NCBI GenBank assembly: GCA_964247055.1 | Contig: OZ176050.1 | Coordinates: 9,734,001 to 9,798,000, forward strand | Reading direction: 5' to 3' | Origin: Paragordius varius | Lineage: Eukaryota; Animalia; Nematomorpha | Length of the DNA: 64,000 nt | In this document: positions 13,969-61,189 of the stretch, in pieces | How positions within the stretch are numbered: the stretch's first letter is position 1 | Layout: every line of letters begins with the position of its first letter | The notes under the pieces: generated by a model | Seen by the model: the letters and a program-made list of their open reading frames with translations, nothing else | Databases searched by the model: none | What the model was told of the DNA's origin: nothing | Made by a program: the position numbers and the translations under genes

Positions 13969-16900
13969 ATGGCTGCACCACCGCCACCACCACCCTCTAT
14001 TCGGGCACCACCCCCTTTACTTGGAAAAAATGCCAAAGTTGCCACAAATCTTGGTATAACAAAATATATTCTTTCCGTAACTATTTATTTTTTTTATCAA
14101 TATATTTCATAAATATTTCAGATTATAAACAAGATATATGTATTTAATATATGGCTAACTTATATTCAGCGGGATATTATTATATATTTTTATGTCTTAA
14201 TTAATTATAACCTAAATACAAGAGATAATATACCACTTAGACCTCGGTTACCCTTGGATAAAATCACCCTTGACCGTTTCAAAATTCTATCACTTTTTAA
14301 TTATTTTAAACAAAGTTTTCTTATAAAAATATAGCTAATTTTTAATTTTTAAAAACATAATTTATTTTTAGAATACTAGGTAATGTTTAATTGTCAATTC
14401 GAATAATTTAAGGGTAAATTTAAAATGTTCATATTAAAAAGAGTGAAATGGAGGAGTAAATAATATATTAAATTTTTCAAAATTTGAAGTTAAAAAAATA
14501 AAAAGATAAATGATAGTATGTTTCAAACAGAAAGCACTTAATATCATGTAAAAATATTGAAATCAGGACTCAAAGAGCCCATGGTTAATTATTTAATAGG
14601 AAAAGGCTCGCATAAATATGCGACCAAGTCCTGGTTTATTTTATCAAAATCCCCCTAATAACCAATACGATATCGATTATAAATAGCGATTATATGGACC
14701 AAATATACAGTTTTTTCCTAAATAATTGATATAAAATTTAAATAATTGCTATTATTAAAATTTATAGTTCTTCTATATCAATGAAATGTCAGTAAAAATG
14801 GAAATGATAATCGACGTTGTGATTAAACGGTGAGATATAAAGAATGTTTTATAAATAATAGTTTTCAAACAACTTAAAATAAATTCATGCTTTTGATGAT
14901 GATAATCTTTCCTCTAAGGATCTTTGACCTGTAATTATAAATCGTCAAACCTCATATAAATGCAGTTTAAGAGTCAAAACCAGTCAAAAATGCCAGAAAA
15001 GCACACCTTTTTGTAAACAACTATATTTTACCAACTAATTTTAATTTTAATATATATTTAATATCTTCTTTGGTGGATCGTTTTTATATATTTTATTATT
15101 TTATTAACATATCATAGCGTGTTAAATTTCCAGTTAATACAACTTAAGGAAACTTAATGGTTTTCTGAATCCGAAAATAGGGGTTAAATTTTTCTAAAAG
15201 AATTAAAATGCACGTAGCGGCTGATCTGTATTTTAGCTATCAAACGATAAAATATGGATTAGAGACCATGTATTTGCAACAGTTTTAACATATATTTAAA
15301 CAATCAGCCAAGCTACAATATTTTTTAAATTTTTAAAAAGCGTTTTTGTGGTTTGATCTTGAAACATCGAAAAAGCTTTTGGTTAAAAGAACTAATAATG
15401 TTTCAATAGTTTGTGTGCAAATGGTTAAATGTTACCCTTTAAAGCCTATACAAGATTTTCGCACATGATTGTATCGGGTAAAATTAATAATCTAGTAAAC
15501 TTTGATTTACTAGTAAAATGATTATTAAACATAAAAAGTAGGATTGTTAATAAAATTTAATTTTAAGGATGTTTTATACTTAAAGGGTATAATCAATATT
15601 TAGAGTGGTTTTAGGGAAACATAGCCCAAAAGTTAAAATAGTTCGAACAAGGTTGCAGATGCAATCATTTTGGACAGATAGATTCTAAGAAGTGCGGTTT
15701 TCGAATTGTGCACTATATTAAAACACTATAAAGGACAAACCATGATTGTGCCACCTGACATTGATATATAAACACTAAATTATAGCTATTAATTAATCAT
15801 TATATGATGGATACAACGTAAATTCTTATGTGGCATGGGCAAAAATAAAATTATACGCACAAAACGTAAGATGAGGACAAATATTTTTTTCTAAAACACA
15901 ACCATACTTTTTATATCTTTATTTTTTTAAATATAACTAATTGTTTAAAACTGTAAAATTTAAATAGAGATATTTATTGGTAACAATCACATATCTATTT
16001 TTCGATTGCAATTGAATCATTTTTATAGGATAAGTTAAACTATAAAAGTATGGTTGTCTTTTAAAAAATTGTCTTTATATTTTTACGTTTTTTTTCGTAT
16101 AATTTCAATTCACACTGTAATAAACAAATTCAATAAAATCATTTATTAGCTCTAAGCGTGAAACACCACAGTTGGTGGTAGATTAACATTATAATCAATG
16201 GGCCCGAATCAGGAAATATTTAATTGTTAATTGATAATTAAATCTTTCCCCCTAGTTTAAAGTTAACATATTTTGTAATGTTTTTAATAGAAATCAAATG
16301 CCTAAAGCCGGTTGTGGTATCTCGTAAACCAATGAAAAACGTTTTTTGGACCCGGATACAATCGACCGATATGGCACACAAAGCAAACTTTGATAAAACC
16401 GTGTGGGCTAAAATTGAAAAAGAAGGAACATATCTAAGCAATAAATTGGAACCTATTCAGGAGGATTTATTAGTAGATTTGTTTGGTCAGGAGAGTGTAC
16501 TTAAAGATTCATCTTCCAACTTAACCGGCAACAAAGGACTCAGTGATAGTGGAAAGATATCTGGCTCAAACACTGCACTCACCAATACATCAAGTTGCAA
16601 CAGTAAAGAGGCCGTCATTACTGTTTTGGAATCAAAGCGCTCTTTGGACATTAACGTAACGCTAAAAAGTTTCAAACTTGAAGTGGGAGACATAAAAATA
16701 GCACTAGCAACGTTAAATTTTAAATTATTAACGGATGATTTAATTAAAAAACTGTACGTTATAAAGCCGACGGCTGAAGAAACCAAAGGTATCAAAGATG
16801 CCGTCAATGCAATGATAGAATCAAATCCCGATAAACCCTATACGATGAATGTTCCAGAAAAATTTTGTTTGGAAATGTCTACCATACCTTGCTTGGAAGA

Positions 16901-19514
16901 AAAACTATGGTGCCTACTGTTCAAAAATAATTTTCATGAAGTTGTGAGCAGTCTCAAAAATATTATCAGATTGTTTCAGTCATATGTCGAAGTATAAGTA
17001 TAATTATATTTGATATTTAATGGCTTAAGAGGTTTATAAAAGATGCCAAAACATTTTTGTTAGCATTCAAATAAAAAAGGTATTTCGACTAAACATAATC
17101 ATCAAACACTATATAAATCCAGTTTAAAAAAGAGCTGATTCTAATAATACATATATTAACGCTTTCAATACATAATAATCTAATAATTAATTTCAAATTT
17201 TTATCATAATATGTTATTTTAGTAAAAAAATCCTGAAAAAATGGCGGCAAGCTTTTAAAGAAAATTTTTTGCTATATATTTTTTAACATTTTCACAATAA
17301 TACTTAAAATGATAAAATGAAAATTCATATGCCTACATGCATAAAAATTTTTCTCAATTGAGCTAATAATATTTACCTTACTGTAAAAAAGGAATTAATT
17401 TTTGAATAAATCAGGAAAGTTAACTATCCGTAAATATATTCTTTACTTATTAGAATAAATACATATAATTTGATTTAATATAAAATATAAGTTTACTCAA
17501 ATTCAGTTATTTGATTTTCACATAAATAGATTCTACTAACAAACAAAGATATCAATATCTTTTTATCCATATTACTTAATTTGGGTAATTATATGAACGC
17601 CTCAAACAAATCTCGATCTCAAGCTGATGGATTCAATCTGGAAACATTGAATAACATAAGGGGTATTAAGTCTAACACACAAAATATGAATCTTTTGCAA
17701 TTTGCCGTCAATTTTCAAATCCAACGGTTGCTCAAACAATCCTTCTACAAAAATTTGGCAAATGGCCATCAGCTTAAAGAGATTGATGGAAATTTTGGAA
17801 ACAATGGGGACGCTGATAAATCATTAACATTTTTTGAATCAAAAACACTCCCTGTTCTTGTGTTGGACAGTTTATTGCCAGTATGTACAGAGTGTCCAAT
17901 GCCAGAACCAACAGCTTTTCGCGATTTGTGTCATGTCAATTTCGATGAAATAAATCAAAGCATTGAAGAAATCGCACAATCCTTAAAAAGTATATTAAAG
18001 AATTGAATTGCAAAAAAGATAATTTGAGAGTGTAAAGTTAGGCTAAATGAGATATTTTAAAATATTTGGGAATTATATACAAATTCTCATCAAGGGTAAG
18101 TATTTATTTGTGAACCGACAATGACTCTTTTAAAATTCGAGAAAATTATTACTCGCATAAAGTATAAATATAATAGTGTATGATGATGATCGTAATGTGC
18201 TCAGGTTGGCAATAGGCTACAGTACTATCGAAAAAACTTATATAATTCGGTATCATCCCCCCTCATATAGCCTAAAAACCTTGAATAATTTTTTAAATTT
18301 ATACAAGGCAATAATAAGATATCTAGAATAATTTTTTGTTAAATCATAATACACAATAAAAATACAAATCAATTGGAACTGTTCCCGTTCTTTTTGTGGA
18401 ATTGGAATCAGGAACATTTTTATGGAACTTGTTATGCTGGAGGCACGGCTTAAAGAGCTCCAAAATATTGATTCAACTTTTTTCTTTTGTATTAATTTTA
18501 AGAAGAATAAATTTGAGTTATAAAATATATTTTTAAGGTTTTCACATAAAAATAACTGATAAATTTAAGCCAATATGACTTATTGTGACATTTTGTTGAC
18601 ACATCAAAAGAAAGGCATCAGTAATAATTTAAAATGAACCGGATCAAAATCATTTGTCCCTATGAAGTAGTATCTGAACAATAAATAAATTGAATCTTAA
18701 ATCATTTTTGTTTGTCGGTTCCAATTCCATCTTATTTTGTCTTAACATATTTCGTTTGTAAAAAATTTGTTTTTAACCTTATAGAATTTGATCAAAAATA
18801 TGGTGTGATATGCGATTCGTCTTTAGAGGATGATGCAAAAAGCTATGTAATTTACTTAAAGGAGTTGCAAAATAATGGTATTATCCAATTTATCCAATTA
18901 AATCGTAGTCTGAAAAATATTTTACCATTTTAATGTTAAATTCATATCGAAAATATTCGATATTTACATTATTAATCCATTCTATTTACACTTGAAGAGA
19001 TAGTTACTATAGAGTTTTCCTACAAAAGCGCTCTTGGCATTTTTTAATTACATATTAAATTAGCTAAAAATTTAAATATGTGGAAAATTATTTAACATTA
19101 AAATATTTTTTCATAAACTGTTAGAGCTAACCACTAACGACCAACATGATTTTCTTTCATCTATGACTAATTTATCAACAAACTGGTGTTTTTTATCTTA
19201 AATAAAAAATCAGATTCAAAACAGAATTTTGGGCATTTATATTATTATTATTATCAATTTATAACAATTAACTTTTGTTACTTACAAATGTTAATAGTTA
19301 CTATTGAATTCGAATCTCTGAAAAAATCATTTGAGGAGATGAAAAACAAGTAACTTTTTACCTAAAGTGTAAAAGGTATACTCAGGTAACGCAATACTTT
19401 TGTTGGAAAACTACTAAGATGGACAAAGCGGGAGAATTTTTTAAAGTATGGCAAGATTTTTTCCAAGATTATCGTGATATGTGGAATTTGGAAATACAAA
19501 AGCTTAATAAGTAA
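13969..19514 (+). CDS. Formin, FMN/cappuccino-type FH2 with a very short FH1, about 509 aa. Exons 13969-14053, 16291-16991, 17530-17989, 18785-18877, 19298-19349, 19376-19514
   Basis: MAAPPPPPPSIRAPPPLL..; PMKNVFWTRIQ (FMN-type PMKPLYWTRIQ); LGNYMNASNKSRSQADGF; TQYF..FFKVWQDFFQDYRDMW. Exon phases are consistent. Introns 2,237, 538, 795, 420 and 26 nt. An extra terminal exon from 20810 (via donor AA|gtaata at 19511) is possible but unproven. Confidence 0.88.
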
Positions 19515-37329: not shown

Positions 37330-39940
37330 ATGAAAAAAGAAAAGTATACGACTAATTCCATCACTGAGAAGTCTGGACCAAACGTGTTAGACATTCAAAA
37401 ATGTATTTTTAATTATCTTTCCATCATTAACCGGAGAAAAAAGAATACATTTTCTCAAAAACCCACCACGTACGATTCAGAAAAATTTGTTCAAAACGCA
37501 AACGATGATTTTAATTCCAATGTGAATGCAGATCCACAAACCAGCATTCAACATAATCCATTTTTAATTTATTGCGATGACACCCAAAATTATTATGGTA
37601 CTCAACTAGAAGCGCAGATGAGCTTGGGGGATTGTAGCCCCTATCAAATCGAAAATCTTAATATAAAGGTATTTCTATTGTATGTTTTTAGACGAGTTCT
37701 AAAATATATAATGAAATTACGTTTAAATAAAAGATTCAAATTAAGCTTATAATTAGGATTAGTTAGTTGGTATGTTTTGAACTATGAATGACTCTTCGCC
37801 TTTTATATAATAGAGATTGCGCATTTTTAAAAAACATACGTCTTTAAATATATATAGTTAAATTATATTTTGCTATTTGCTCCAGTATAATTAGTAATAT
37901 GATGATAATAAGTCCCGATTTTTGTGATATTTTAATGATAATTTGTACTTGTAGAAAATAATGATCGAAAGGACCGAAATGGAAGAAATAATTGATTATC
38001 TCTATTTTCAAGTTGAGAAATTACCATCAGTGTCGGAATGTCAAAGCAAACGCGTCTACATAAACAAGTGCGATCCAACCCCACCGGGATTTGAGACACA
38101 CCTAAAGCCTGGAGATTTGATCCTTAAGGTATTTTACTAAGAAAATTGATATTTTAGAGTTAAATTTTTATGCATATCAATTACACTTCAAATTCACCCT
38201 CAAACATTTACTGACCCTAAAATAAATTATACGTGTTTTTTAAGATTAAAAATTACCTATATTTTTAATATTTTTAACTAATGTTGGTTAATATTAAAAT
38301 AATATAGAAAAATAATAAACTAAGCCATAGATATATATTTCATATTAATAATGAGTCACATTAACCCGAAAACACATTACGGTGAATTTGAATCGTGAAT
38401 AATATTAAGATGACACAATATAAAATTTTATATTTTTTAGATCAATAACATCCCAATCTTGTCGATTGAAGCTATCTCAGAAATTTTGAACGACCCCGAG
38501 TACACATCTTACGAATGGGAAGTATTGCCAAATACGTATGTCATTCAAGCGCCTTCAACAAACATAAATGTTGTTTCAGGTTATCAAAACAACAATCTTG
38601 AAGTTGATCTTGGCTCCAATCTCCCATTTGCTGAATTTTATGAATACGCTCTTTTACCACCCGTTGTGAGCCCAATTATTAACACCAAACACAGTAATGA
38701 TAGTCCATGTTTGAAACAGAACCATATCAATTTTACGCTTGATTCTCGCCCAGAAAAAGATAGTGGTCTAGATTTTAACATGGGCAGCAGCGTAGAATCC
38801 TTAAATTCATTTTCTCTGGAAGAAATCAATAACTTCCAAGAGAATCAACACAAACACTCGTTCTCATCCAACATGGATATTAAGGAGTTTAAAACAGCGC
38901 TAAATATATCGCATGAAAGCGGAAACTATTCATTATTGATGCGTGAACATGCTTTTGTAAAAAAATCAAAACAAGATAATTATGATAATACAAATACTCA
39001 AAATTATTTAAATAATGCTTCCTCCTATGAAAACACTGAAAACATTTATGAAGATTTGTTGGATTTTAAGGCCGCCTCTCTATCACTTTCATCTTCTCCT
39101 AAATCCAATTGCAACCATTCTCTCAAAGTTAACATTAATTCTGATACTTATCACAATCAACAGCATTTCAATGAAATAGATGAACTCAAAAACTGTGGCG
39201 CCCAATTAGGCGCCATTAGACAACAAATATTAGTGACAGATGGTGTTGTTAATGATAATAAAGGATCCATAAAAACTACCAATCAAAATAATTATGATGC
39301 AAAATACCATGGAGATAGCAAAGGAGAAGTACATGACGAATCTATTAATAAAAATTATAATGGAATTATAAACCAAATTCCTGACACTCATCGGAACATA
39401 CATAATTATGTAACACAAAATAATATTAATGTCTCAATTAATTACCATCAAAATGAAATCATAGATAAAAAGAGTGAGTTAGAGATTCCTAATACTCCTC
39501 CAGTACGAATTGATACAAATAATTATCCTGATATCATGTACACTAATAGGCAATACTTGTCACATACTATATCACTTCAACAGAAATTGTTTCAACAAGC
39601 ACATAAGGCAAACCATACTGTTGAAATTAATGAATCGATTAAAAATAACGCGAACTCACCTAATGTTGATCTCAAACTCCACGGCGCAAAATATCCAGCT
39701 AAAAATTATCTTCTAGCCCAAAGTCTAAGGCCTGTCCTAGGAGGTTCAGAAAAAATTCGTGTGAAAATAAAAAGGAAAAAAGATGGTTCTCGTTACATCA
39801 TACGTGATACTTTAGCTAATGAGGAAGTAGATTCAGCAATTCCTGCAAAAAACTTAAATTTCATACAGAATGATAAAAATTCTCATTCAATAAAAACCAA
39901 CAATCATCACAAAAATCTCATTAGTGTTATAACAATATAA
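37330..39940 (+). CDS. PDZ-domain protein resembling the PDZRN3/4-PDZD4/Slip1 family, about 670 aa. Exons 37330-37668, 37955-38128, 38441-39940
   Basis: Phase-0 splices join LKPGDLILK|INNIPILSIEAISEIL (PDZ). A long Asn-rich region follows, then MYTNRQYLSHTISLQQKLFQQA, VKIKRKKDGSRYI (cf. PDZRN3 WKVKVRSDGTRYI) and C-terminal NLISVITI* (cf. FLSVTTV*). The start codon is uncertain. Confidence 0.75.
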
Positions 39941-44091: not shown

Positions 44092-47000
44092 CTATAAGGT
44101 ATTTATTGCACTGTATTGCTTTAAAAATTCAAGCGTCTCTCCAATCTCATCCTTTTCCACGGGTATTAGGGGATATGGATTCTTGATTTTTTCCAAAGCA
44201 CCCAATAAATTAGCAAGAAAATTGTTTTGGATGTTAGCACCATTCTCAATCATTGTGCTTGATAACAAAGTTCGAAATGTGGAATTCTTGGGTAAACCTA
44301 TCATCCATCATACGATAAGGTTATTATATGATTGTTAATATTTATTTTCGTATCCAATATATTAAATTTTTAATTAACTCTGAAAAACATAATAAATATG
44401 GTTACAATTTGCTATAAAATATTATAATCTACCATTTCCGAGCCAAAAAAAAACGTTTTTTCATCGAAACGATGTCCATGTCAATCGAAACATTTTCCCA
44501 GTGAATAAAAACAATGTCCCAATCAATATAACCGTTTTCCCGATCAATGAAAACGATTTAATTTTTGATGATAAATAACAAAACAAGACATGAAAATAAC
44601 TTTAAACCATTAAAAGCATATCAATAGATATTATTTTTTAATTAAACACAATTAAATGACAATTTTTTCTATGTATGCCAATACACAATCATTGATAACT
44701 TATTCTTTAAAAGTTGTATTTATAACTGAATGATTATTATGGTTTATGAGCTAAAAATATTTTGCAATTCAAACTGATTTTTAAACATTCGATGTTTGAC
44801 CCTGATAAAAATATTGGAAAAAAATTTCCTAAATAAAAAATATTTTTAAAATGTTAAATTTCAATGAAAAATATTTAATAAAAAAGATATTTGACCAAAA
44901 GATACATTATATAAATTATGCCTAAGTTTCAAATGTTAAAAAAATGTAAAGTGTTAAACGACCGACTTGAAATGTCAATGGTGTTTTTTTTATTATAATT
45001 TCATCCGAAACTATAGATATTTAAAGGTTAGCCCGAATATTAAGGCGAACCATTGATCTCGAAATAAAAAAGTTTATGAAAAATTTTCTAAAAAATATTT
45101 TTTATATGATTATTTCAAAACAATAAAATACTCATTCCGTTAATAAAAAGCTTTTGGAGAATAAATCATAAAGGATTGTGTATTGGCATATAATAAAAAA
45201 ATTGTCATTCAATTATTCTGATTCTCTATAAAATAAATCCATATAGTATCATTAAAATAAAACCGTTTTTATTGACTGGGAAAATTTTGTTATTGACTGA
45301 AAAAATGTTTCGATTGAGTGGGAAAACGTTCCGGTATATTTAAAAAGATAAAATTATAGCATTCATTTTAAAAAAACCTGTTTGATATGAAGGTGGGAAA
45401 TTAAATATCCAAGGATATAATGGCGAAAGTTCTATACGTTTCGGGTTTGTGTATGATTCTACAATGGCTTGTTGTTTCTTACTAGAAAATATAAGTAAGT
45501 TAAGCTTAAAACCACTGATAATAGAAAAATATACATTGCTCAACATCCGTATCATAACTCTTTTTCAAAAAATATTAATATTTTCTTAGATTTTTTAGAA
45601 AAATATTTAGTATCATTCGACAGATATAACAAAAATGATTTTTTTTTATTTTTGGCTCATACGATGAGGAGATAATTAATATAAAAGGATTCGACTGTAT
45701 ATAATAATGTTATTAAATCCTATATATATCTTTTATAGAAAACTTTTCAATTTGGGCATCCATATTAAATGATTCAAAACCACGCATGATAGTGAAAATA
45801 GGACGACGTTTTTGGTTATCATCTAACTTATTTGAAGCGTAGGGTGTAAGAGCAAATGGTTTGGTTTGATCAGATATATCACATGTATGCGTGTCAGGAA
45901 AAAATAATTGTGTTGTAATCTTTCGAATCTTAATATATTCAACAGATTTTTAGGTGCAGTAATTTTTATTCGGATAAAAAAATTATAATATGCTTTATCA
46001 TGTAAAAAAAATAATTATTTTGTACTAAAAGATAGTTTACTGGCATTCACTTAATATTGATGGATTTTATGTCATTTAAATCATTATAAAAACACTAAAA
46101 ATGAAATAATCGATGTGTATACTAAGAATATTGTCTGCTTTCATGAGTAATACAATTTTATAAAAAAAATCGTTCCGTAAATATGTGTTCATTATTTAAA
46201 TAAAATGATTGAGGTATATAAGTTTACCAAAATAAAATGTAAAAAATATACCCATACCTTATCATTGGAGGGCTGACTTTGATTTAAAAACTGATTTAAT
46301 GAAACCATATCCCATTTATTGGAATGACTATATAGATCATCCATAGAACCTAGGATCAAACTGAACAATGCTGCCTTATTTTCCATGGATGTCATCTGAG
46401 AATATAACAATTATTTAAAAAAATGTGGTAAATATATGTATTTTTTATACAACCAGAATAGAGCCTAATTCATCAAATTTTTCGCGGAAAAGGCTTCTAA
46501 AATTATTTTAATTTGAAAGAAAAAATCAAGCGAAAAAAAAATCTTAAACAAAGAAAATATTTGAACCACTGCCAAAAATAAATAGCAACCTATATTAACA
46601 GGTAGGTACCCTGATAACATTTACCATTATTGTTCATTCCTTCGCCTTGTTCGTCTATTAACACTTCGATTTAAATTGGGGTATCGAAATACCCCAGACA
46701 TAAATTTGAGTTAGGATTTATAAAAAACTACTGAATGAAACGGTCACAATTTAAATTTATGCTTATATCCTAATAAAAATTATATAAATATCCCAAAATA
46801 TCTAAATAAAACTTTGTTTTGAAAAAAAAGTTCCATGTCAAACTTCTTCGACGCCATTTTTATTTTACAAAATTTTTGCAAAATATCGTCTTCATTTAAT
46901 TTTAAGGGTAATATTAAAGCTAATTTTTTATATAAATTACATCTAACATTGATAAAAATAGAAAAAATGGTTTATTTTGTATTATATTTTAATTTTACTA

Positions 47001-50000
47001 TTGCAAACATGTCACGTTGATCAATTTTTACCTTTCGGTTTTAGCTTAAAATAAGTAATATCAAGTATTTCTGAATAAATTTTTATATATTTCGATTTAT
47101 TAATGTATTATGAGTGCAAAATTTTGCCATGGTTTTGATTTCTTTCATATTTTTTAAAGAATTTAATATTAAACAAGCCTGGGGTATTCTACCCCAATTT
47201 GAATCGAAGGACTAAAATGAATGTGTTGTATCCAAGTGTTAAATCAATATTAAATTAAGGCTAAAACCATAATTTTTTTTAAAATGACTCAAATATAAAT
47301 CAAACCCTATGAAGTGTATATATAGAAAAAAAATTTAAAAAACATTTTCACAGGGGCAATTAAATTGTAATGTTATAGTATTATGACTATTTAGAGAAAT
47401 GGAATTAATGCATTTCTCAAGAAATATAAAAACTGGTACATTCTTTGGATATCCCAAAATGACAAAATCCCTGGACTATACGATTCTGTTTTGATGTTAA
47501 TAATCACAAGGACAAAATTATTGAAGAATATTTAACAAATAAAATACTAATTAACAACCGACTGTGAGGATATACATTGTAGTCATCGCATGAAACAATA
47601 TTTCAATCATTATGCACATCATTTATAGTTATCTGCATTTAAATATATACTATTAGCATTAACATGCACATCTCATTTTTGTTCATTGCTATATCAATTC
47701 CCCTATTGGATAAAAATTATTTATATTTAAACCATTTTATTTTAATTATTATTTTAATAAGTAAACATTATATATATATATTTGGTTTAAAAAAAATTAT
47801 AAAAAGAAGATAATTAGTGATAATGTTGTGAGAAGAAAAAAGTTTCGTTTTAACTACTTGTAAATTTGTAAAAAATTAACACTATCGTATTAAAACTTTA
47901 GCGGCACCAAATTCTTTAAAATTAAATAAAGTACTCTCTCTTTTGATAATTGATCAAAACTTAAATTGTGTTATTGGAACCATTAAGTTTTCAAAATTTG
48001 CTTCCCCAAAAGGCTAAGAGATAAGGTAAAATTGTGCAATTGTTAAGTTATGATGCTAAAGTCCTGATTGTGACAGCTAAAATTATTACGTGATTGAAAA
48101 ATATTTTCTAATAATGGTTTACAACCTATAAAATATATAAATTACATAGCTGTGGAAAACAAAAATTTAAAATTATCTGTTTTCAACTATTTTCAGTTTT
48201 GTAAACGCGATGTGATGAAATTGAAGACAGTACATATACGATTAAACTGGTATTTGTGGACGAAACGATAATCAAATAAGAAAACACGTAGTAAAGACTG
48301 CATACGAATTTTGAGTCTATTATCACCGATTTTTAAAGTGTTTTAAATCTGATTCAATATATGATAGTCACCTGCTAGCGATATTCAACTCTTAAAACTT
48401 ATTTATTTGAGTGATTTTGCTTTATTCAATTTAAACATATATCATTGTGGTACTAATTGACTAGTTATGACCATGATTAGTAAGCATTCAGACCGATTAT
48501 TTTTGAAGGGTAAAAACATAACCCTAATTGTAACAATACGTATGACAAAATGTATACGTGAAACCTAAATTATTTAGTTATCATACATTCAATGGAGTAA
48601 AAACTAGGGTTGTGCTGACCAAGTCATGACCCGGTCAATTGACCTGGTCTTCAGGTCAGTGACTATTTATTTTTTAGCCATCATTTAAAAAACAGCTGTT
48701 TTTTGAAAAATTGCCGGTACATTTTTTAAAAGAGAAATAATTGTTTTTTAATATATTTATAAATTAAATATTTATATATGCTTATTTAACAATATAAAAT
48801 TGTTAAACATGCATCATAATACATTAGCATTCCAGCTAATTCGAAAACAAAATCAAACATGCAAAATATGTAATTATTACATATATGTAAACCAATATTT
48901 TTACAAAACATTTTATAATTGAATGTTTGATGAAAAAATGTTTAAAACAAACTAGTTAAAATTTTATTTGAATCCAGTTTAAAAAGCTATGTATTTGAAG
49001 ATTCAGAAGGCCACAAACATGTGGCAAAATTTATTTGAAAACAAAATTGATTATATTTGATTTATAATATTTGCAAATAATAAATATCAAAATGTAAACT
49101 TTTTATGACATTATTAGTAAAACGCAAATGTCGTACAAACATTATTTTCACAATCAAATACCACATGCTATTTACTTTAGTAAAAAGTGGTCATGACCGT
49201 GGTCTGACTGGGTCTGACCGGACTTTTTCAAAAAAGCAGTCAAATGCACAACCCTAATTAAAACATATGAGATTTAATTATTTATTACCATGTCAGATTT
49301 TATGAGGTGATCATTGATAAGCCGATCATGGTTAAATGCATTAAAAGGTGTTGCCGACACGGATAATGGGTAAATATTAAAAATATTTAAATCCACAATG
49401 ACAGATTCCAACAACATTGAGATATTTAATAAATGTGAGTATGAAAGTGCAAAAGGCTTTCCATATTTCAATTCTTTATTAATAACATTTTTCCGTACAA
49501 TCTACACATAAGAAAACATATTCAACCATTTCTATATGTTCCAAAAACAAAAATGTTTCACACGATTTAGAATGGTATTCATCTTTTAGTATGTTTAATA
49601 TGCAATTTTGAGTGCTGAAATTTTCATATTGGGGATCCACTAAAATTTCAAAACCCTGCAACTTAAATTAATTATTACTTTAAATGTATCACTCGTTTCC
49701 AAAAAGGTTTGGATGTTGTCAGTGAAACATTGAGATAATTGTAAACTAAATTATACCATATTTTACTTGTTAATCGTATTAATATTAATTATACTAGGGT
49801 CAACTAGCATATTATACCATTGCCTAGGCAAATCTTTTTCATCATTCAATTCTTTTATATTTTCCTCATTATATTCACAAATTGATGGGTTCCTAAAATA
49901 CAAGAATCACTATACCCAAGAATTCGATTTATAAATAATTGGCCATGATCATCCAACTAAAAATCAAAATACTTATGTACTTTAGATAAATTATTTAATT

Positions 50001-50055
50001 TGCAAAGCGCTAAGGTCCAACAAGCCAAATCCCCAAGACTTACCACAAAAGACAT
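44092..50055 (-). CDS. MSTO1: Misato/MSTO1 (DML1) tubulin-like protein, divergent, 427 aa. Exons 49981-50055, 49916-49956, 49767-49892, 49679-49745, 49527-49655, 49289-49501, 46258-46395, 45744-45928, 45378-45481, 44092-44297
   Basis: Spliced frame of 1,284 nt with no internal stop. FLETSDTFKGFEILVD..FS..ILKDEYHSK (cf. YVEECDYLQGFQILCD..FS..LQDEYSGR); AALFSLIL..LY..DMVSLNQFL; IMRG; SPLYPWIF; VEKDEIGETLEFL. Introns 24, 23, 21, 23, 25, 2,893, 329, 262 and 1,080 nt. Confidence 0.82.
44451..45334. mobile_element. Foldback/MITE with long degenerate inverted termini inside MSTO1 intron 9; related remnant near 55200-55300
   Basis: aaacgttttttcatcgaaac..ttttcccagtgaataaaaac at the left is mirrored by gtttttattgactgggaaaa..tgtttcgattgagtgggaaaacgtt at the right. 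Confidence 0.6.
46662..47211. mobile_element. piggyBac-type MITE, copy 1 (in MSTO1 intron 6)
   Basis: TTAA|CACTTCGATTTAAATTGGGGTA left end and an inverted right end. The body is homologous, in opposite orientation, to 57536-58084. Confidence 0.7.
48605..49256. mobile_element. hAT-type MITE (in MSTO1 intron 6)
   Basis: TIR TAGGGTTGTGC / GCACAACCCTA; degenerate 8-bp TSD GTAAAAAC / ATTAAAAC; subterminal GACC(C)GGTC-like repeats. Confidence 0.72.
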
Positions 50056-51941
50056 GTGTAAATTTAAATTTAAAAACCTTACGCTTCAATGTTCAGTTAT
50101 GTTGATATTCAAGCATTTATTTTTAAATCCACAATTGTTACGGTTCTACACTAGTCCTTTGCCAGTTTTAAGAGTTAATAAATCTTCATTAAAATTTCAA
50201 AATAAAAAGGTAACTTAGATATATAATTTTAGATTGATGGAACAATTAAAGCATATGCCTCGGCCGATTTTTTCAATTTAAATCAAGTTTATTCGTATTT
50301 TATGAATAATAATTATCTTATACAAGAATCGCCTGAAGGTATTTTACTTTTATACTTAAGATTTAAAATCCGATGTGTTGTTTATTAAGTCACCAAAACA
50401 ACCCTCTTACGTTTTTGTCTTTCAAGAAGGCGTGTCTGTTTTTTGGAATAGCTCCGATATTCAAGCATATACCGACCTAATTATAGATTAAAACAATATT
50501 AAATGATCTCAGACCCTTTACACAAAATGCATATAACCAAGATCTAATTGAGGAAGAAAGTGATTCATTGGATACAATTTATCACGAGTAATATTTAACT
50601 AATTATAAAGACATCAAACAAATTTTCATGATGGTGATATATATTTAGGCAAAAATTCTCCAAATATATTGGAAATGTACACATTTTCAAATTCCCTTGC
50701 GCAATCTGGTAAATTTATTTTTATATTTAAGTCAAATTGGGTATATGGGAGCATATGTTGGATAATTGTGCTGATTCTTTGGAAAAAATTGTTGAAGTAA
50801 TTGTTTTATGAATTGGTTAAAAAATTATATTCGATGTAGGTTTTTAAGTTATTTTAAATTTTATATTAATTTTTTAAAATATTACTTTTATGTTTTATAT
50901 TTATGTAGGATATGAAACATCGATCAATGATAGATATGACGGAAGATCAGGCCTTGCAAAAAGCCGGTGAACTTTTTAAATTACGCCATCAAATTAACAT
51001 TGCATCCGATCTTTTAGATTCTCCCGATTTTTATTGGGATCGGGATGATTTGGAACAATTATTTGATAAAACTAGCAAATATCTCAACATCCCTCGACGA
51101 ACAAAAGTAAGGGTACATTTATTTAAAATAACGATTATACATATCTATGAGTTAATTAATTTTATTTACTCTATTAAACTATAATATGGGTAATTACAAT
51201 CGAAAAACGATTACCTAGATTCAGTTTAAAATTATTTGTAAAAATCATCTTAACATATCGTAATCTAATAATATAACGAATAACTTAGAGTGATATTCTA
51301 AAGGGTGTCCAACCCAAATGGCTTTGCGGGCCGCATTTGAAATATATATGGACATTCATAGATAATTTATTAGTTAAGCATAAGATTGAAAATACAAATG
51401 CAATTTAACATTTTTTCAGTTGTTGTTAATTTAAATGACTTTATTTTTTTTATTTAAAAAGAGTGAACTATATCATTCGAAAATTAATAAATTTAATTAA
51501 TTTTAAAGAAATCCATTTAGTCTTTACTATTTTATTATTAGAAAAATTGTATAAAAAATATCAATTTTACTAAGTGTTGACATAGTTTTTCTATAGATTT
51601 CGAAATTTTTTGCAGACCGCATACTGCCCACCCCTGTTCTAAGTTCTGATTCTTTTCTTAGGTTAACTTACGGTTTCCTCCCGAAAAAATACTCAAAGAG
51701 TTGTACTCATTTATTTTAAATATTTTATATTTTTAGATAATGAATGAAAAGCTAAATCATTGCTTTGAACTTGTAACCCTGATAAAAAGTTATTTGAATG
51801 ATAAACACCATGTTCGATTAGAATGGATGATAATTATTTTGATATGTGTTGAGGTAAATAAATTTTTTATTATATCAGGTGATTCTTGGCCTAATATCGA
51901 CATTCAAAACATTATACACTCCCAATACTCAAGAATCATAA
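50054..51941 (+). CDS. RMND1: RMND1 (mitochondrial translation factor), about 335 aa from ATG 50054 (alternative ATG 50099). Exons 50054-50209, 50233-50338, 50361-50464, 50487-50587, 50611-50708, 50732-50796, 50909-51106, 51737-51853, 51879-51941
   Basis: [10 protein letters not shown]; [13 protein letters not shown]; [20 protein letters not shown]; [28 protein letters not shown]; [24 protein letters not shown]|VIL. The 1,008-nt spliced frame is colinear with RMND1. Introns 23, 22, 22 (GC-AG), 23, 23, 112, 630 and 25 nt. Confidence 0.93.
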
Positions 51942-52427: not shown

Positions 52428-54190
52428 TTGGAAAATTCTGCCAATGAGATCGAAGATATTACTAATGTAGCTAAACAAATTGCAGACTGTATTAGACTAA
52501 AATGTCAACAGTTCTTGCAACATGATAATTTAGAATTTAAGCCTGAAATTGCTATTACATGTGGATCTGGGCTTGGAAACATCGTTAAAGAGTTAATATC
52601 TGCTCCTACTGTTAATTATAATAATCATAACTATCTCATTATACCTTATGCAAGTATACCTCACATGCCAATATCACAAGGTATTTTTGCTGCATATTAT
52701 GTTTTTACCACCAAGTAATTTATAAAAAGTTATTTGAAATTTTATGTTTGGTTTTTTTATCATTACAGTAGAAGGCCATTTGAATCAAATGGTTTTTGGT
52801 ATTCACAATGGTGTTCAGTTCCTATGTTTCCAAGGACGAGTTCATATATATGAGGGCCTTCCTGACTCAAAAGTATAAAATTATAATGTTAATTTGTATT
52901 GGTGTAGGTTATAACTGAAACTTAAATTTAATGCAGTTTTTTATGATATATATGTACTAAAATACCCGTTTCAAAAAAAATATATTCCTATTAGTTGACA
53001 TTAATCATAAGAGCCTTGCACATGCTTGGGATTGGGTGCCTTTTCCTTACAAACGTGTCTGGTTGCATTTCACCCCGTTTTAAAATGGGCGATATAATGG
53101 TTATAAGAGATCATGTAGACTTGCCAAGTCTGTTTGGCTATTCGAACAATGGATATTACAGGTTATATGTCATATGTAAAATTGACTGTTACACCTAATT
53201 ATGTACTTTTGGCATCGATCCTTTATCATACCCTTAAAAACCTTATAAATAGCAACGTTTGTTGGTAGTGTGACATATTGATGTAGTTTTGGTTTTAAAT
53301 TATATTTTTACGACTGTTTCTGTTCTGTAAATAAATATTAAAGGTTACACTGCCTTCTTGTAATATTTTATAATCCATTTTAGATGTTTTTATTATTATT
53401 ACATTAAAAGTAATCAGTTATCGGTAATATTGTGTATCATAGTTTTCTATCCATGGCATCTACACATTCTTCATTAGTTTTTCCAATAATTTACTTTTAC
53501 TATGAATTTTTGTAGATACTTAATTTGGTGTTTTATTATAAATATTTAACCCATCTTACATATAATAGGAGCTAAATCTTATTATTTTAGATCTAATAAA
53601 TCTAATGGTTCAACTTATTCGGAGGATCTCATAAGTTTAGCCTTACAATCGGCCAATGATTTACATTTAGGGGATATTTGTCGCCAGGGAGTATATATTA
53701 GAGCCAGTGGACCCAATTATGAAACTTGTTCTGAACGAGCCTTCTTTCAACGAAGTGGAATGGGAGACGCGATAGGTTATATAATAAATTAAATTAATTT
53801 TCATTTAATTGAAATATATTTTTAATGTTATCCCCTTTTCTATTTTATTTTCTTCATGAGGTATAATACCATATAATTAAAAAATAACTTTTTAAATTTA
53901 AAACGATTAATTTATACGCTTTATTTTCATAATTGACTTACGATGCATTTTTAGGGGCCAGTACTGCTAATGAAGCTACACTAGCCCATAACTTAGGCAT
54001 GAAAGTGTGTGGATTTAGTTTGATAACCACTAATTATGAAAATGCTGATAATTTATTAAATGAAACCGGAAATCAGGGAAAATCTACTTTTATAGATCAT
54101 AATCAATTAATTAATTTTTCAATGGATGATGGAGCTAAAAAATTGGGACAAATTTTGAAAAGAATGATTGAGATGCTTGCGCAAAATTAA
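52428..54190 (+). CDS. PNP: Purine nucleoside phosphorylase paralog 1 (divergent; start unresolved). Exons (52428)-52680, 52769-52872, 52995-53161, 53591-53775, 53955-54190
   Basis: IAITCGSGLG, VEGH, FQGRVHIYEG, LTNVSGC, GDIMVIRDHVDLP, SGPNYET, GDAIGASTANE, GFSLITTN. Introns 88, 122, 429 and 179 nt. Confidence 0.88.
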
Positions 54191-58084: not shown

Positions 58085-59062
58085 TTAAAAAACGTATGAG
58101 AGCTGTCAGTTTCAAGATTTAATTTTTGATTTTGTAGAATGGCGCCAAAACTAAGTAGGCTAGCTCTTCAATACAGCCCCTTTTTAAAAAAAAAATTGAC
58201 TTAATATATTTTAAAAGGGCACGTCCATGTACAAATTAGAAATATTTATTTAAATAAATGCGTCTTTGGCGTCTAAACCACATATTTTTCTATATTTACC
58301 CCAACCGTGTATAGATTAGATTTTCTTTAAAATATTTACTTTGAAGCCTTTTCCTGAAAAAAATATAAGACTATTAACATTAATTAATATTTAAAGAAAA
58401 AAGATGATATTCAGCTGGACAGACTCTATCAAATTTGTCCTTGTAGTTAGCTGGAAAATTAAGTATTTTGCAACATTTAACCAACAAATTCTAAAGTTCT
58501 AGTATATATAAAAGCATAAATTTACACAACTTATCATTAGGGTAAAAATTATTAAGCGCTTTTGTAAATACGCCACTAAGTAAATTCTAAAACACATTAT
58601 TTATATAGTCATATTCATATACTTCATTATAATGGGATCATTTTCATTAAGGGACCGTTTTAATATGGCCAATTTGGTGTTACAGATAAAATATTTAATT
58701 TTATGTAAAATTCCCAAAAAATCACTTAATAGCAGTATTTATTGCTAAAATTTTACAAAAATAATTATCGGTCAGAGTACGTTACAGCGAAGCGTGACAG
58801 GGCCAGCTAATATTATTTAAATTTCCACAAATATATATTTTGTAAAATCAAAAGTAATGTTATTAATATTTAATGTGTATTTTAATATTAAACCGTGATG
58901 TATGCCATATAATCTTAAGGCACCCAAAAATATTTCGAAGCATTATAATAAATTTTGTCTGTTATGCGTAACCAATTTTTTTGTTGAATTTTACTTATTG
59001 TGGTTAAGCATCATATGATCATGTAACCACCTAAAAATCGATATCTTTTGGGTGGCTTATTT

Positions 59063-61189
59063 ATGGAAGCTATGGATAAGGAATTTATGTGGAAATCCGC
59101 CAACGAAATTTCCAATTATATTAAATTAAGATGTGAAGAAACGTTGAATTCTGACCCTTTTAAACCATGTATTGCAATTATATGTGGCTCTGGATTAGCC
59201 GATGTATCGGATATTTTAGATGGTGATGACGAAAAAATGAGTTATAAACGATTATCAGTGCCATATTCTGAAATTCCACATATGCCAATATCTCAAGGTA
59301 TATTAATAAAATATTTTAGTGGATGGTCATTTGAATAAATTAGTGTTTGGTACTATTAATAATCAGTATCAAGTATTATGTTTTCAGGGAAGATCTCATT
59401 TTTATGAAGGTATCCCGTATTGGAAAGTATGAATTTTTTTTATGCATAGTTAATTTTGCCACTGCGAGCGCTTAAAATTATGGGCATAAAAATTGTATTT
59501 TTGACCAATGTTGCTTCGTGTCTATCAGATGAATTTAAAACAGGAGATATTATGTTAATTAAAAGCCATATTGATTTACCATCATTAATTGGATTAAATC
59601 CATTGCTTGGACCAAATGATGATAGGTACTAAATCATTATATTTTGGATATTAATTATTATATATAAATATTTTGGCATAGTTTCGCCAACTTAAAATTA
59701 ATTTATATACATAACTATTGTAGAACCTATTTATGAAAAGGTTTAGTAATATATACCTCGAAGCTTCCACCATCTTTGCTTGAAATTTTTTATTAGATGC
59801 TTTTGAAAACTCAAAAGAAAAAAATATATATAACTTGTAATAATTTAACTGAAAAAATTATTGATTTTTGGTAATTAATTTGTTAGAGAAAGGTGTCACT
59901 ATAAGCCGATTCATACATTTTTTCCCTAAATCCATTATTTTTAGCAACTTTTAAAAACTAATATTAATTTATACTGGTCCTTATGAAAAGTTAAAAATTA
60001 CATTGTATGCTTTACGAAAATACTACACATAACCTGGCTTAATATGTCGTAAAATAATTATCAATTGAATTTTTAGATTATTATATTATTGCTCGCTTGT
60101 GTAATTAATTTTTTTTATTGCCTAATATTTTAACAAATATATTGTATTGTTATATCCATTATTTAGATTTGGGATCAGATTTCCAGATTGTTCTCAAATT
60201 TATTCAAAGAAATTGATTGAAAAAGCACAGGAAGCCGTTAAAGAATTAAATTTGGGTGCGTTTTGTCGAGCCGGCGTTTATATCCGTTGTAGTGGACCAA
60301 ATTATTCGACTTTGGCTGAAACTCAATTTCTTCAAAATTGTTTGAAGGGTGATGCTGTCGGTAATTATTGAGAGATATTTTTTATAATCCTAAATTTTTA
60401 CGAAATTATCTTAAAATAAAAAAAAACATGTGCAATAAAAAATTGTAAACAAGTGGAGAAAACATTTTATCCTTTTATAATTAATTTTACACCCGATTTC
60501 TATCATTCAACCGTATCCATATGTATTAGAAAAATTAGGGATATAATGCAATTATTTTTATAAAAAAGCATCCTTTTAATTTTTTTATTTAATACAGGGG
60601 ATTCCAACACAAATATCTTCGCGGCTGCTTTGATGATTTTTGTTTTTTTACTTTAAATAATAGTAATTTTTGATTAACCAATTTTTTAACATTTTTAGAG
60701 CACTTTTGCACATAAAAACACCTGCTGGACATCCATGATTTAGAACATAAAATTATATTTTAAATCTAATAACAGTCTAACTCTGACATAATGCGATTTA
60801 AATTATTTATATTAAGTCTTTTATTCTTATTATCACACTCACTAGGCTCAAGTTTATCGGACGAAGCTCTTGTTTTATACCATTCATCTTTGGCTGTTTG
60901 TGGTTTGAGTCTCATAGCCGATGATTATATTTGTGCAACGGATGAATTAAGTGATATGTTGGAACAAGAAATACCAATCACCTATAAACATCCCGAAATA
61001 ATGTCTATGCATGATGAATCGATAACTATCACTGCCATTCAACAGCAAGAAAAACGCAAAAGTTTAAGGGAACAAGAGGCTGTACTAGCCTTATCAGTAG
61101 ATGATGGTTCCCGTAGGATTGGACAAATCATAAAGAATGTCGTACTCAGGCTTATCAAAGAAAATGCACTTGAAAATTACAGTGAATAA
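59063..61189 (+). CDS. PNP: Purine nucleoside phosphorylase paralog 2, 351 aa. Exons 59063-59297, 59320-59426, 59450-59625, 60167-60360, 60846-61189
   Basis: IAIICGSGLA, VDGH, FQGRSHFYEG, LTNVASC, NPLLGPNDDRFGIRFP, SGPNYSTLAE, GDAVGSSLSDE, GLSLIADD. Introns 22, 23, 541 and 485 nt. Confidence 0.9.

What the first reader, a model, noticed from the sequence alone, without database searches (positions are those of the whole stretch)
49502..50731. A class of 21-26 nt spliceosomal micro-introns in a repeat-rich animal genome
Seen: 14 introns of 21-26 nt (21 x1, 22 x3, 23 x6, 24 x1, 25 x2, 26 x1). MSTO1: 49957-49980, 49893-49915, 49746-49766, 49656-49678, 49502-49526. RMND1: 50210-50232, 50339-50360, 50465-50486, 50588-50610, 50709-50731, 51854-51878. 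PNP2: 59298-59319, 59427-59449. Formin: 19350-19375. Each is needed to avoid a stop or frameshift. Removal restores gap-free family alignments at the well-conserved junctions (e.g. LAQS-V|KLGIWE, ISQ-V|DGH, YHE|[10 protein letters not shown]). The next size in the window is 69 nt and others reach 2.9 kb, so the distribution is bimodal. Established: introns this small characterise Paramecium, chlorarachniophyte nucleomorphs, microsporidia and dicyemids, lineages whose introns are generally tiny; they are well below the usual minimum for animal U2 spliceosomes. Inference: this animal's spliceosome handles both roughly 23-nt introns (AT-rich, no room for a separate branch point plus polypyrimidine tract) and kb-long introns. 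Default gene predictors would miss these genes.
Basis: partly seen in the sequence, partly recalled or inferred. Interest (0 to 1): 0.92.

Follow-up and report, generated by a model that had tools for sequence, protein, structure and literature searches.

The report
Tiny 21-26-base introns, horsehair worm
Genes in this AT-rich animal DNA, most likely from a horsehair worm, carry introns of only 21-26 bases at sites where a related worm, a spider and a chiton have ordinary introns; this would be a third animal group with introns under 30 bases, though no RNA data showed the splicing directly.

Summary
All 14 listed segments exist at the stated coordinates and sizes. Thirteen are GT..AG and one is GC..AG. 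Retaining any of them would give a premature stop or a frameshift.

Eight are firmly supported as introns:
- **RMND1 (six micro-introns):** the spliced model is a clean 335-aa DUF155 protein. All eight of its introns lie at the position and phase of introns in the horsehair worm Gordionus, where they measure 36-48, 171, 284 and 1674 nt. Most also match spider or chiton introns of 85-2292 nt. The rare GC donor is shared with Gordionus.
- **PNP2 (two micro-introns):** the exons map to consecutive residues of solved PNP structures.

The other six are weaker. The five in the "MSTO1" gene and the one in the formin rest on splice dinucleotides, reading frame and polymorphism pattern. No tool confirmed the MSTO1 name.

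Independent DNA-like runs carry the segments at unchanged length, so they are not assembly errors. No RNA data covered the locus, so splicing itself is inferred.

Introns under 30 nt are published for dicyemids and myxobolid cnidarians (Mol Biol Evol 2026), but I found no report for Nematomorpha. This scan has already noted the same class on many other windows of this genome, also without RNA evidence. Verdict: a new member of a known kind.

The parts
50054..51941 (+). RMND1 (DUF155) gene. Nine exons: 50054-50209, 50233-50338, 50361-50464, 50487-50587, 50611-50708, 50732-50796, 50909-51106, 51737-51853, 51879-51941. Product 335 aa.
   Evidence: The spliced model translates without stops. Exons hit Pfam DUF155 in colinear order, exon 7 at E 1e-19. 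It aligns without gaps at the conserved junctions to 16 homologues. It is 57-59% identical to Gordionus RMND1; the next best is 49%.
50210..50232 (+). RMND1 micro-intron 1, 23 nt, GT..AG, phase 0
   Evidence: Gordionus has a 36-nt phase-0 intron two alignment columns away, in a weakly aligned N-terminal stretch; spider 1208 nt and chiton 655 nt introns sit there too. Two polymorphic sites at +4 and +5.
50339..50360 (+). RMND1 micro-intron 2, 22 nt, GT..AG, phase 1
   Evidence: Same column and phase as a 48-nt Gordionus intron and a 2292-nt chiton intron.
50465..50486 (+). RMND1 micro-intron 3, 22 nt, GC..AG, phase 0
   Evidence: Same column and phase as a 42-nt Gordionus intron that also has a GC donor; spider 85 nt, chiton 1100 nt.
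50588..50610 (+). RMND1 micro-intron 4, 23 nt, GT..AG, phase 2
   Evidence: Same column and phase as introns in Gordionus (41 nt), spider (1392 nt) and chiton (1538 nt). In-frame TAA if retained.
50709..50731 (+). RMND1 micro-intron 5, 23 nt, GT..AG, phase 1
   Evidence: Same column and phase as introns in Gordionus (47 nt) and spider (2149 nt). The junction LAQS-V|KLGIWE is gap-free in 16 homologues.
50797..50908 (+). RMND1 intron 6, 112 nt, GT..AG, phase 0
   Evidence: Orthologous to introns in Gordionus (1674 nt), spider (931 nt) and chiton (1328 nt).
51107..51736 (+). RMND1 intron 7, 630 nt, GT..AG, phase 0. Holds a high-copy repeat at about 51303-51640.
   Evidence: Gordionus 171 nt. Contig depth rises about 50-fold at 51306-51501, with many deletion-type joints and loose ends at 51303 and 51338.
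51854..51878 (+). RMND1 micro-intron 8 (the last intron), 25 nt, GT..AG, phase 0
   Evidence: Same column and phase as introns in Gordionus (284 nt), spider (1196 nt) and chiton (1094 nt). The junction ILICVE|VILG is gap-free.
49277..50055 (-). Exons: 50055-49981, 49956-49916, 49892-49767, 49745-49679, 49655-49527, 49501-about 49277. Open for about 221 codons.
   Evidence: The spliced model is open. There was no Pfam, PDB or Atlas support for the name, and no further exons were recognised downstream. Differences in other individuals' contigs: 4 of 8 exonic ones are synonymous or at the third codon position.
49957..49980 (-). Micro-intron, 24 nt, GT..AG, phase 0, in the MSTO1-labelled gene
   Evidence: the 3' TAG is in frame, so retention gives a stop. 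Four polymorphic sites within 24 nt, none in GT or AG.
49893..49915 (-). Micro-intron, 23 nt, GT..AG, phase 2, in the MSTO1-labelled gene
   Evidence: Frame and boundaries only.
49746..49766 (-). Micro-intron, 21 nt, GT..AG, phase 2, in the MSTO1-labelled gene
   Evidence: In-frame TAA if retained.
49656..49678 (-). Micro-intron, 23 nt, GT..AG, phase 0, in the MSTO1-labelled gene
   Evidence: From memory only, the joined peptide resembles the tubulin/Misato 'GF.I' motif; not tool-tested.
49502..49526 (-). Micro-intron, 25 nt, GT..AG, phase 0, in the MSTO1-labelled gene
59051..59626 (+). PNP paralogue 2, first three coding exons: 59051-59297, 59320-59426, 59450-59626
   Evidence: The three pieces match solved purine nucleoside phosphorylases at residues up to about 60, 63-95 and 98-154 of the 289-residue human chain, which is contiguous. 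Pfam PNP_UDP_1. Exons 1 and 2 are 55-63% identical to the Gordionus PNP.
59298..59319 (+). PNP2 micro-intron, 22 nt, GT..AG, phase 1
   Evidence: The same site holds an intron of about 38 nt in Gordionus and an 88-nt intron in paralogue PNP1 (52681-52768).
59427..59449 (+). PNP2 micro-intron, 23 nt, GT..AG, phase 0
   Evidence: The same site holds a 122-nt intron in PNP1 (52873-52994) and an intron of roughly 1.2 kb in Gordionus.
19350..19375 (+). Formin micro-intron, 26 nt, GT..AG, phase 2
   Evidence: The downstream piece matches the end of Pfam FH2 (positions 338-371) only weakly, E 0.08. The upstream short exon has no hit. Larger FH2 exons lie at 16278-16997 and 17530-18003.

Best explanation
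These are genuine U2-type spliceosomal introns that have shrunk to 21-26 nt. The genome is most likely that of a horsehair worm (Nematomorpha).

They are orthologues of ordinary ancestral introns. The same sites hold introns of 85-2292 nt in a spider and a chiton, and a class of about 36-48 nt in the hairworm Gordionus. In this lineage the minimal-intron class has roughly halved.

The splicing signals are reduced to GTA at the 5' end, a T-run of about four bases followed by AG at the 3' end, and usually an A at position -7 or -8 that could serve as the branch point. The micro-introns sit next to each other between exons of about 100 nt. That arrangement fits recognition across the intron (intron definition), while other introns of the same genes are 0.1-0.6 kb or longer, one of them swollen by a repeat.

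- **Shown:** boundaries, frames, orthologous positions, and presence in independent DNA.
- **Inferred:** removal from the mRNA, the branch point, and the mode of recognition.
For: - 14 of 14 segments have canonical boundaries: 13 GT-AG and 1 GC-AG.
- The spliced RMND1 is a clean 335-aa DUF155 protein and aligns without gaps at the conserved junctions to 16 homologues.
- All 8 RMND1 introns share column and phase with Gordionus introns, mapped exactly from XP_065314084.1 onto its locus. The GC donor is shared. Seven also match spider and/or chiton introns.
- PNP2 exons map to consecutive residues of solved PNP structures. Both PNP2 sites hold introns in Gordionus and in paralogue PNP1.
- Contigs of three independent DNA-like runs cover the segments colinearly with no length change.
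- Of the listed differences, 7 fall inside micro-introns and none in GT or AG. The 20 exonic ones are biased to third positions (12) and synonymous changes (11).
- Retention always gives a premature stop or a frameshift.
- Signals: GTA in 13 of 14, T-rich at -6 to -3, A at -7 or -8 in 12 of 14. This is like the published ultra-short animal introns (PMC13644364).
Against: - There is no RNA evidence. The only RNA-labelled run laid had no coverage, and the protein collections hold no transcript-derived product of this species.
- The kind of runs X1, X3 and X5 is not on record. I read them as DNA because depth is even across introns and intergenic DNA.
- Six of the 14 (the MSTO1-labelled gene and the formin) lack homology support. 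A decoy scan shows that frame-joining GT..AG segments are common by chance.
- The branch-point hint rests on 14 sequences in a genome that is 73% A+T.
- The organism is inferred from one orthologue at 57-59% identity, a PNP at 55-63% and shared gene structure, not from a marker gene.
Confidence: 0.85

Rival explanations
1. Some of the 14 are chance GT..AG segments placed by eye, specifically the five in the MSTO1-labelled gene and the one in the formin. The true structure of those two genes would then differ. The RMND1 and PNP2 micro-introns would still be real.
For: The decoy scan gave 299 frame-joining GT..AG segments against 261-414 for scrambled dinucleotides. There is no Pfam, PDB or Atlas support for the MSTO1 pieces. 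The formin upstream exon has no hit and the downstream hit is weak.
Against: Five consecutive segments of 21-25 nt with GTA/GTT..AG keep one frame open for about 221 codons. Four polymorphisms cluster in one of them while exonic ones lean towards synonymous changes. Their size and signals match the eight verified introns.
Confidence: 0.15
2. The segments are small insertions in decaying genes (pseudogenes), or errors of assembly or polishing, and are not removed from any RNA.
For: No RNA evidence was obtained.
Against: Random indels would not all carry GT/GC..AG ends, and would not fall exactly at ancestral intron positions and phases in two genes. The exons show a bias towards synonymous change. 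The segments are present with the same length in contigs of three other runs.
Confidence: 0.02
3. The segments are germline-limited DNA that is cut out of somatic genomes, like the internal eliminated sequences of ciliates, rather than out of RNA.
For: The size range resembles the shortest Paramecium eliminated sequences (my own knowledge). Programmed DNA elimination exists in some nematodes.
Against: The boundaries are GT..AG, not TA..TA. No contig in three whole-animal runs shows the excised form (joints table). The positions are those of spliceosomal introns in animals that lack such elimination.
Confidence: 0.01

Closest known systems
Ultra-short introns of myxobolid myxozoans: Henneguya salminicola (median 27 bp), Thelohanellus kitauei and Myxobolus rasmusseni (median 22 bp). 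Hadjez et al., Mol Biol Evol 2026, PMC13644364.
   Same: Animal GT-AG introns under 30 nt at conserved intron positions. The 5' signal is reduced to GTa and the 3' signal to AG. There are weakly conserved A residues a few bases upstream of AG. Short introns neighbour other short introns.
   Different: These are cnidarian parasites with compact genomes in which the tiny class is the median intron. Here the lineage is an ecdysozoan worm, the DNA is repeat-rich, and introns of 0.1-0.6 kb or more sit in the same genes. That paper found such introns outside Myxozoa only in Dicyema among 51 genomes.
Dicyemid introns (Dicyema japonicum; Lu et al. 2019, PMC6736024; cited in PMC13644364)
   Same: A bilaterian parasite with introns of about 20-30 nt and reduced splice signals.
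   Different: A spiralian with a strongly reduced genome of about 68 Mb. The origin is independent.
Flatworm 'microintrons' (Opisthorchis felineus and other flatworms; PMC6530080)
   Same: A bimodal length distribution with kb-long introns. Microintrons cluster next to each other and towards the 5' end, lose the polypyrimidine tract, and are missed by default annotation thresholds.
   Different: The mode is 37 nt with a second peak at 90 nt, which is above the 30-nt mark. Here the mode is 23 nt.
Short-intron class of the hairworm Gordionus (RefSeq model XP_065314084.1 on OX940784.2)
   Same: Same genes, and the same intron positions and phases, including the GC-AG donor of RMND1 intron 3. GC content is about 26-27%.
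   Different: Gordionus short introns are 36-48 nt, against 22-25 nt here. Its last RMND1 intron is 284 nt against 25 nt here, and it keeps one intron that this species has lost.
Tiny introns of ciliates (Paramecium about 25 nt, Stentor 15-16 nt) and chlorarachniophyte nucleomorphs
   Same: Similar size range. Few introns have a length divisible by three without an in-frame stop: here 2 of 14 are multiples of three and both carry a stop.
   Different: These are protists in which all introns are tiny. There is no coexisting long class.

Membership tests
U2-type spliceosomal intron | GT (or GC) at the 5' end and AG at the 3' end | tested here: met
   13 GT..AG and 1 GC..AG out of 14.
U2-type spliceosomal intron | Removal restores an open frame that encodes the conserved protein without gaps at the junction | tested here: met
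   Met for RMND1 and PNP2. For the MSTO1-labelled gene and the formin only the frame is restored; homology was not confirmed.
U2-type spliceosomal intron | Position and phase shared with introns of orthologues | tested here: met
   All 8 RMND1 introns match Gordionus and 7 match spider and/or chiton. Both PNP2 sites hold introns in Gordionus and in PNP1. Not testable for the other six.
U2-type spliceosomal intron | Absent from mature mRNA | not testable with these tools
   The RNA-labelled run X8 had no coverage. X1, X3 and X5 behave as DNA. No transcript-derived protein of this species is in the collections.
U2-type spliceosomal intron | Branch-point adenosine and lariat formation | tested here: inconclusive
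   An A is present at -7 or -8 in 12 of 14 introns. About 8 would be expected from base composition, and no lariat data exist.
Ultra-short (30 nt or less) animal intron class as described in PMC13644364 | Length of 30 nt or less at conserved intron positions, with the 5' signal reduced to GTa | tested here: met
   Lengths are 21-26 nt and GTA occurs in 13 of 14. Positions are conserved.
Ultra-short (30 nt or less) animal intron class as described in PMC13644364 | Short introns flanked by other short introns | tested here: met
   Five consecutive micro-introns in RMND1, five in the MSTO1-labelled gene and two in PNP2.
U12-type (minor) intron | Extended 5' consensus (A/G)TATCCTT and a TCCTTAAC branch site | tested here: not met
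   None of the 14 sequences carries either motif.
Ciliate-type internal eliminated sequence | TA dinucleotide at both boundaries and an excised form in somatic DNA | tested here: not met
   The boundaries are GT..AG. No excised joints appear in the contigs of three runs.
Nematomorpha (assignment of the organism) | Closest orthologues and gene structures are nematomorph | tested here: met
   RMND1 is 57-59% identical to Gordionus against 49% or less for all others fetched. PNP exons are 55-63% identical. RMND1 and PNP are neighbours in both genomes. GC content is 26-27% in both. No marker gene such as rRNA or COI was available in the window.

The most novel reading that the evidence does not exclude
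A hairworm lineage is a third, independent animal origin of spliceosomal introns under 30 nt. It arose within the phylum by roughly halving a minimal-intron class of about 40 nt that is still seen in Gordionus. It did so in a large, transposon-rich genome of a macroscopic worm. If true, ultra-short introns are not tied to genome compaction or body miniaturisation. It also gives a close species pair for asking what sets the lower size limit of the animal spliceosome.

A corollary to test: gene-finding and BUSCO-type tools that cannot model introns of 21-26 nt may overstate gene loss in such genomes.
Probability: 0.75. Interest if true: 0.72.

Novelty: new member of a known kind. Interest (0 to 1): 0.62.

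Why it matters
The recent survey of 51 animal genomes (PMC13644364) found introns under 30 nt only in myxobolid cnidarians and a dicyemid. It linked them to parasitic genome reduction.

A hairworm with 21-26-nt introns at ancestral intron sites would add an ecdysozoan lineage, next to 0.1-0.6-kb introns in the same genes and in repeat-rich DNA. That weakens the compaction explanation.

It also offers a natural comparison (about 23 nt here against about 42 nt in Gordionus at the same sites) for studying the minimal requirements of U2-type splicing.

In practice, annotation and read-mapping defaults with a minimum intron near 20-40 nt (my own knowledge of common tools) would break such genes. 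This could inflate reports of missing conserved genes in Nematomorpha.

Tried and rejected
- **RNA evidence.** Both run searches gave only runs of unrecorded kind that behave as DNA, plus small RNA-labelled runs with no shared words. Laying X1, X3, X5 and X8 gave colinear contigs and no spliced joints.
- **Transcript-derived proteins of this species.** Searches with the Gordionus RMND1, the formin ORF and the PNP2 first-exon ORF found none. An exact look-up of P0001 also failed.
- **Confirming MSTO1.** Pfam on five exon pieces, PDB on exon 5, Atlas on exon 6 and Pfam on eight downstream minus-strand ORFs gave nothing relevant. I did not type the spliced protein into any tool, so it was never searched as a whole.
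- **Statistical scan.** A window-wide count of frame-joining GT..AG segments did not exceed the decoys, so I dropped it as evidence.
- **Rfam** found no snRNA or other RNA gene in the window, so the splicing machinery could not be examined.
- **My first guess** (dicyemid or myxozoan) was rejected once the nearest orthologue proved to be Gordionus.
- **Inverted-repeat search** in the 630-nt intron found no clear terminal repeats.
- **Supplements of PMC13644364** are not held, so I could not see whether hairworms were among its 51 genomes.


Full report
**What is in the sequence**

The window is 21-31% GC throughout. All 14 segments lie at the stated coordinates and have the stated lengths. Thirteen begin with GT and end with AG. 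One, 50465-50486, is GC..AG.

Joining the exons on the + strand from 50054 to 51941 gives an uninterrupted 335-codon frame. It has six micro-introns (23, 22, 22, 23, 23 and 25 nt) and two larger introns (112 and 630 nt). Joining the minus-strand exons from 50055 down to about 49277 gives about 221 open codons across five micro-introns.

If any of the 14 were retained, the frame would meet a stop inside the segment (six cases) or shift (eight cases). The two segments whose length is a multiple of three both carry an in-frame stop.

A scan of the whole window counted segments of 18-32 nt that join two open stretches of at least 20 codons. It found 299 with GT..AG ends and 261-414 with scrambled dinucleotide pairs. 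In this sequence, 'needed to avoid a stop or frameshift' is therefore expected by chance. It counts for nothing without homology.

**RMND1**

- Exon pieces hit Pfam DUF155 in colinear order: profile positions 1-15, 55-83 and 108-171, the last at E 1e-19.
- A search of 1.8 billion representative proteins with exon 7 gave RMND1 homologues.
- In a MAFFT alignment of the spliced model with 16 of them, the conserved junctions show no gap: FWNSSDIQ|IKTIL, IYHE|HQTNFH, LAQS-V|KLGIWE and ILICVE|VILG.
- The best hit is a protein of Gordionus sp. m RMFG-2023, a horsehair worm. Identity is 57-59% overall, against 49% or less for every other sequence fetched.

**Intron positions in RMND1**

I fetched the Gordionus locus and mapped its RefSeq protein exactly onto the DNA. 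Its introns are 36, 48, 42 (GC..AG), 41, 47, 1674, 42, 171 and 284 nt. I did the same for a spider (Parasteatoda) and a chiton (Liolophura).

In a four-way alignment, seven of the eight window introns share column and phase with a Gordionus intron. The first lies two columns from one, also in phase 0, in a weakly aligned N-terminal stretch. The GC donor of intron 3 is shared. Sizes at each site, in nt:

| Window | Gordionus | Spider | Chiton |
|---|---|---|---|
| 23 (two columns off) | 36 | 1208 | 655 |
| 22 | 48 | none | 2292 |
| 22 (GC donor) | 42 | 85 | 1100 |
| 23 | 41 | 1392 | 1538 |
| 23 | 47 | 2149 | none |
| 112 | 1674 | 931 | 1328 |
| lost | 42 | 86 | 206 |
| 630 | 171 | 1945 | 998 |
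| 25 | 284 | 1196 | 1094 |

One intron present in all three other species has been lost here. These micro-introns are therefore shrunken orthologues of ancient bilaterian introns.

**PNP2**

The three exon pieces match solved purine nucleoside phosphorylases at residues up to about 60, 63-95 and 98-154 of the 289-residue human chain. Once the split codon and two terminal residues are counted, nothing is missing or extra at either junction.

- The first site holds an intron of about 38 nt in the Gordionus PNP and 88 nt in paralogue PNP1 of this window.
- The second site holds about 1.2 kb in Gordionus and 122 nt in PNP1.

**The less secure six**

- **MSTO1-labelled gene.** No tool recognised any exon piece or any downstream open frame. 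Its five micro-introns are supported by canonical ends, one continuous frame, the same size and signals as the verified ones, and the polymorphism pattern.
- **Formin.** The exon after the 26-nt segment matches the end of FH2 only weakly (E 0.08), and the short exon before it has no match.

**Independent DNA and polymorphism**

Contigs of three runs from three samples, labelled as two organisms, cover the region colinearly with no gaps at any micro-intron and no joint that skips one. Depth is even across exons, introns and intergenic DNA, so I read these runs as genomic DNA, although their kind is not on record. This removes assembly error as an explanation.

Of the 27 best-supported differences between 49292 and 50544:

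- Seven lie inside three micro-introns, and none touches GT or AG.
- Twenty are exonic. Twelve of those are at third codon positions and eleven are synonymous.

The list is truncated by the tool, so this is supporting evidence only.

**Signals**

Position +3 is A in 13 of 14 introns. Positions -6 to -3 are mostly T. An A stands at -7 or -8 in 12 of 14. None shows U12-type motifs. This matches the description of published ultra-short animal introns: a 'GTa' 5' site, a bare AG, and a few weakly conserved A residues upstream.

**What could not be done**

No RNA evidence was obtained. The only RNA-labelled run that could be laid had no coverage. The protein collections hold no product of this species. 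Splicing itself, the branch point and the recognition mode are inferences.

**Comparison with what is known**

- Introns under 30 nt in animals were reported in September 2026 for myxobolid myxozoans (medians 22-27 bp) and Dicyema japonicum. These were the only such cases among 51 genomes.
- Flatworms have clustered, 5'-biased 'microintrons' with a 37-nt mode next to kb-long introns.
- The Gordionus genome paper and a comparative preprint on hairworm genomes do not mention introns. Searches for hairworm short introns found nothing. The Cunha et al. 2023 paper is not in the library.

This is a known kind of feature in a lineage where I found no report of it.

This scan has already noted the same class on many other windows of this genome. 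Follow-up agents reached the same hairworm reading, also without RNA. I reached the Gordionus link independently. New in this report are the four-species positional orthology, the shared GC donor, the PDB-numbered PNP junctions, the decoy control and the polymorphism classification.

**Verdict**

Eight of the 14 are firmly introns and six are probable. Novelty: a new member of a known kind. Confidence in the intron reading is 0.85.

Noticed in passing
window 50053-50056: The start codons of the two head-to-head genes overlap in the palindrome CATG: RMND1 ATG at 50054-50056 on the + strand, and the MSTO1-labelled gene's ATG at 50055-50053 on the - strand. The RMND1 N-terminus from 50054 resembles the Gordionus N-terminus, so each gene's 5' leader would lie inside the other gene's first exon.
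   Followed up: partly
window about 51303-51640, inside the 630-nt RMND1 intron: A very high-copy repeat. Contig depth rises about 50-fold, and there are many deletion-type joints (166-213 nt skipped) and loose ends at 51303 and 51338. It accounts for more than half of this intron's length. No clean terminal inverted repeat was found.
   Followed up: partly
window 49150-49256: An extremely high-copy repeat ends at about 49234-49256, with summed depth about 3x10^5 in X1. It lies just downstream of the apparent end of the MSTO1-labelled reading frame, so the gene may continue beyond an intron that holds this repeat.
   Followed up: no
window 50909-51106 (RMND1 exon 7): An intron present in Gordionus (42 nt), spider (86 nt) and chiton (206 nt), phase 2, is absent here. 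This is an intron loss in the window species.
   Followed up: yes
window 52681-52768 and 52873-52994 compared with 59298-59319 and 59427-59449: The two PNP paralogues carry the same two introns in different size classes: 88 and 122 nt in PNP1, 22 and 23 nt in PNP2. Gordionus has about 38 nt and about 1.2 kb at these sites. PNP2 rather than PNP1 shares the ILDGDDEKM stretch with the Gordionus gene.
   Followed up: partly
runs X1, X3 (organism A) and X5 (organism B): Contigs labelled organism B are nearly identical to the window at low depth (0-3 differences per 250-390 nt). Those labelled organism A differ by about 1-3% at high depth. Possible explanations are inconsistent species labels or a second organism's sample that contains this worm.
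   Followed up: no
window 45716-45949, minus strand: An open frame with a weak Pfam match to Nuf2 (E 0.064). It may be an exon of a further gene downstream of the MSTO1-labelled one.
   Followed up: no
window 38459-39940, plus strand: The longest open frame of the window (493 aa, TTG start) has no Pfam match. It lies in the most GC-skewed part of the window and may belong to a mobile element.
   Followed up: no
L001 3001-6450 (Gordionus RMND1): Gordionus itself has a tight class of 36-48-nt introns (six in this one gene) next to introns of 171-1674 nt. This bimodal pattern resembles flatworm microintrons and is not mentioned in its genome paper.
   Followed up: partly
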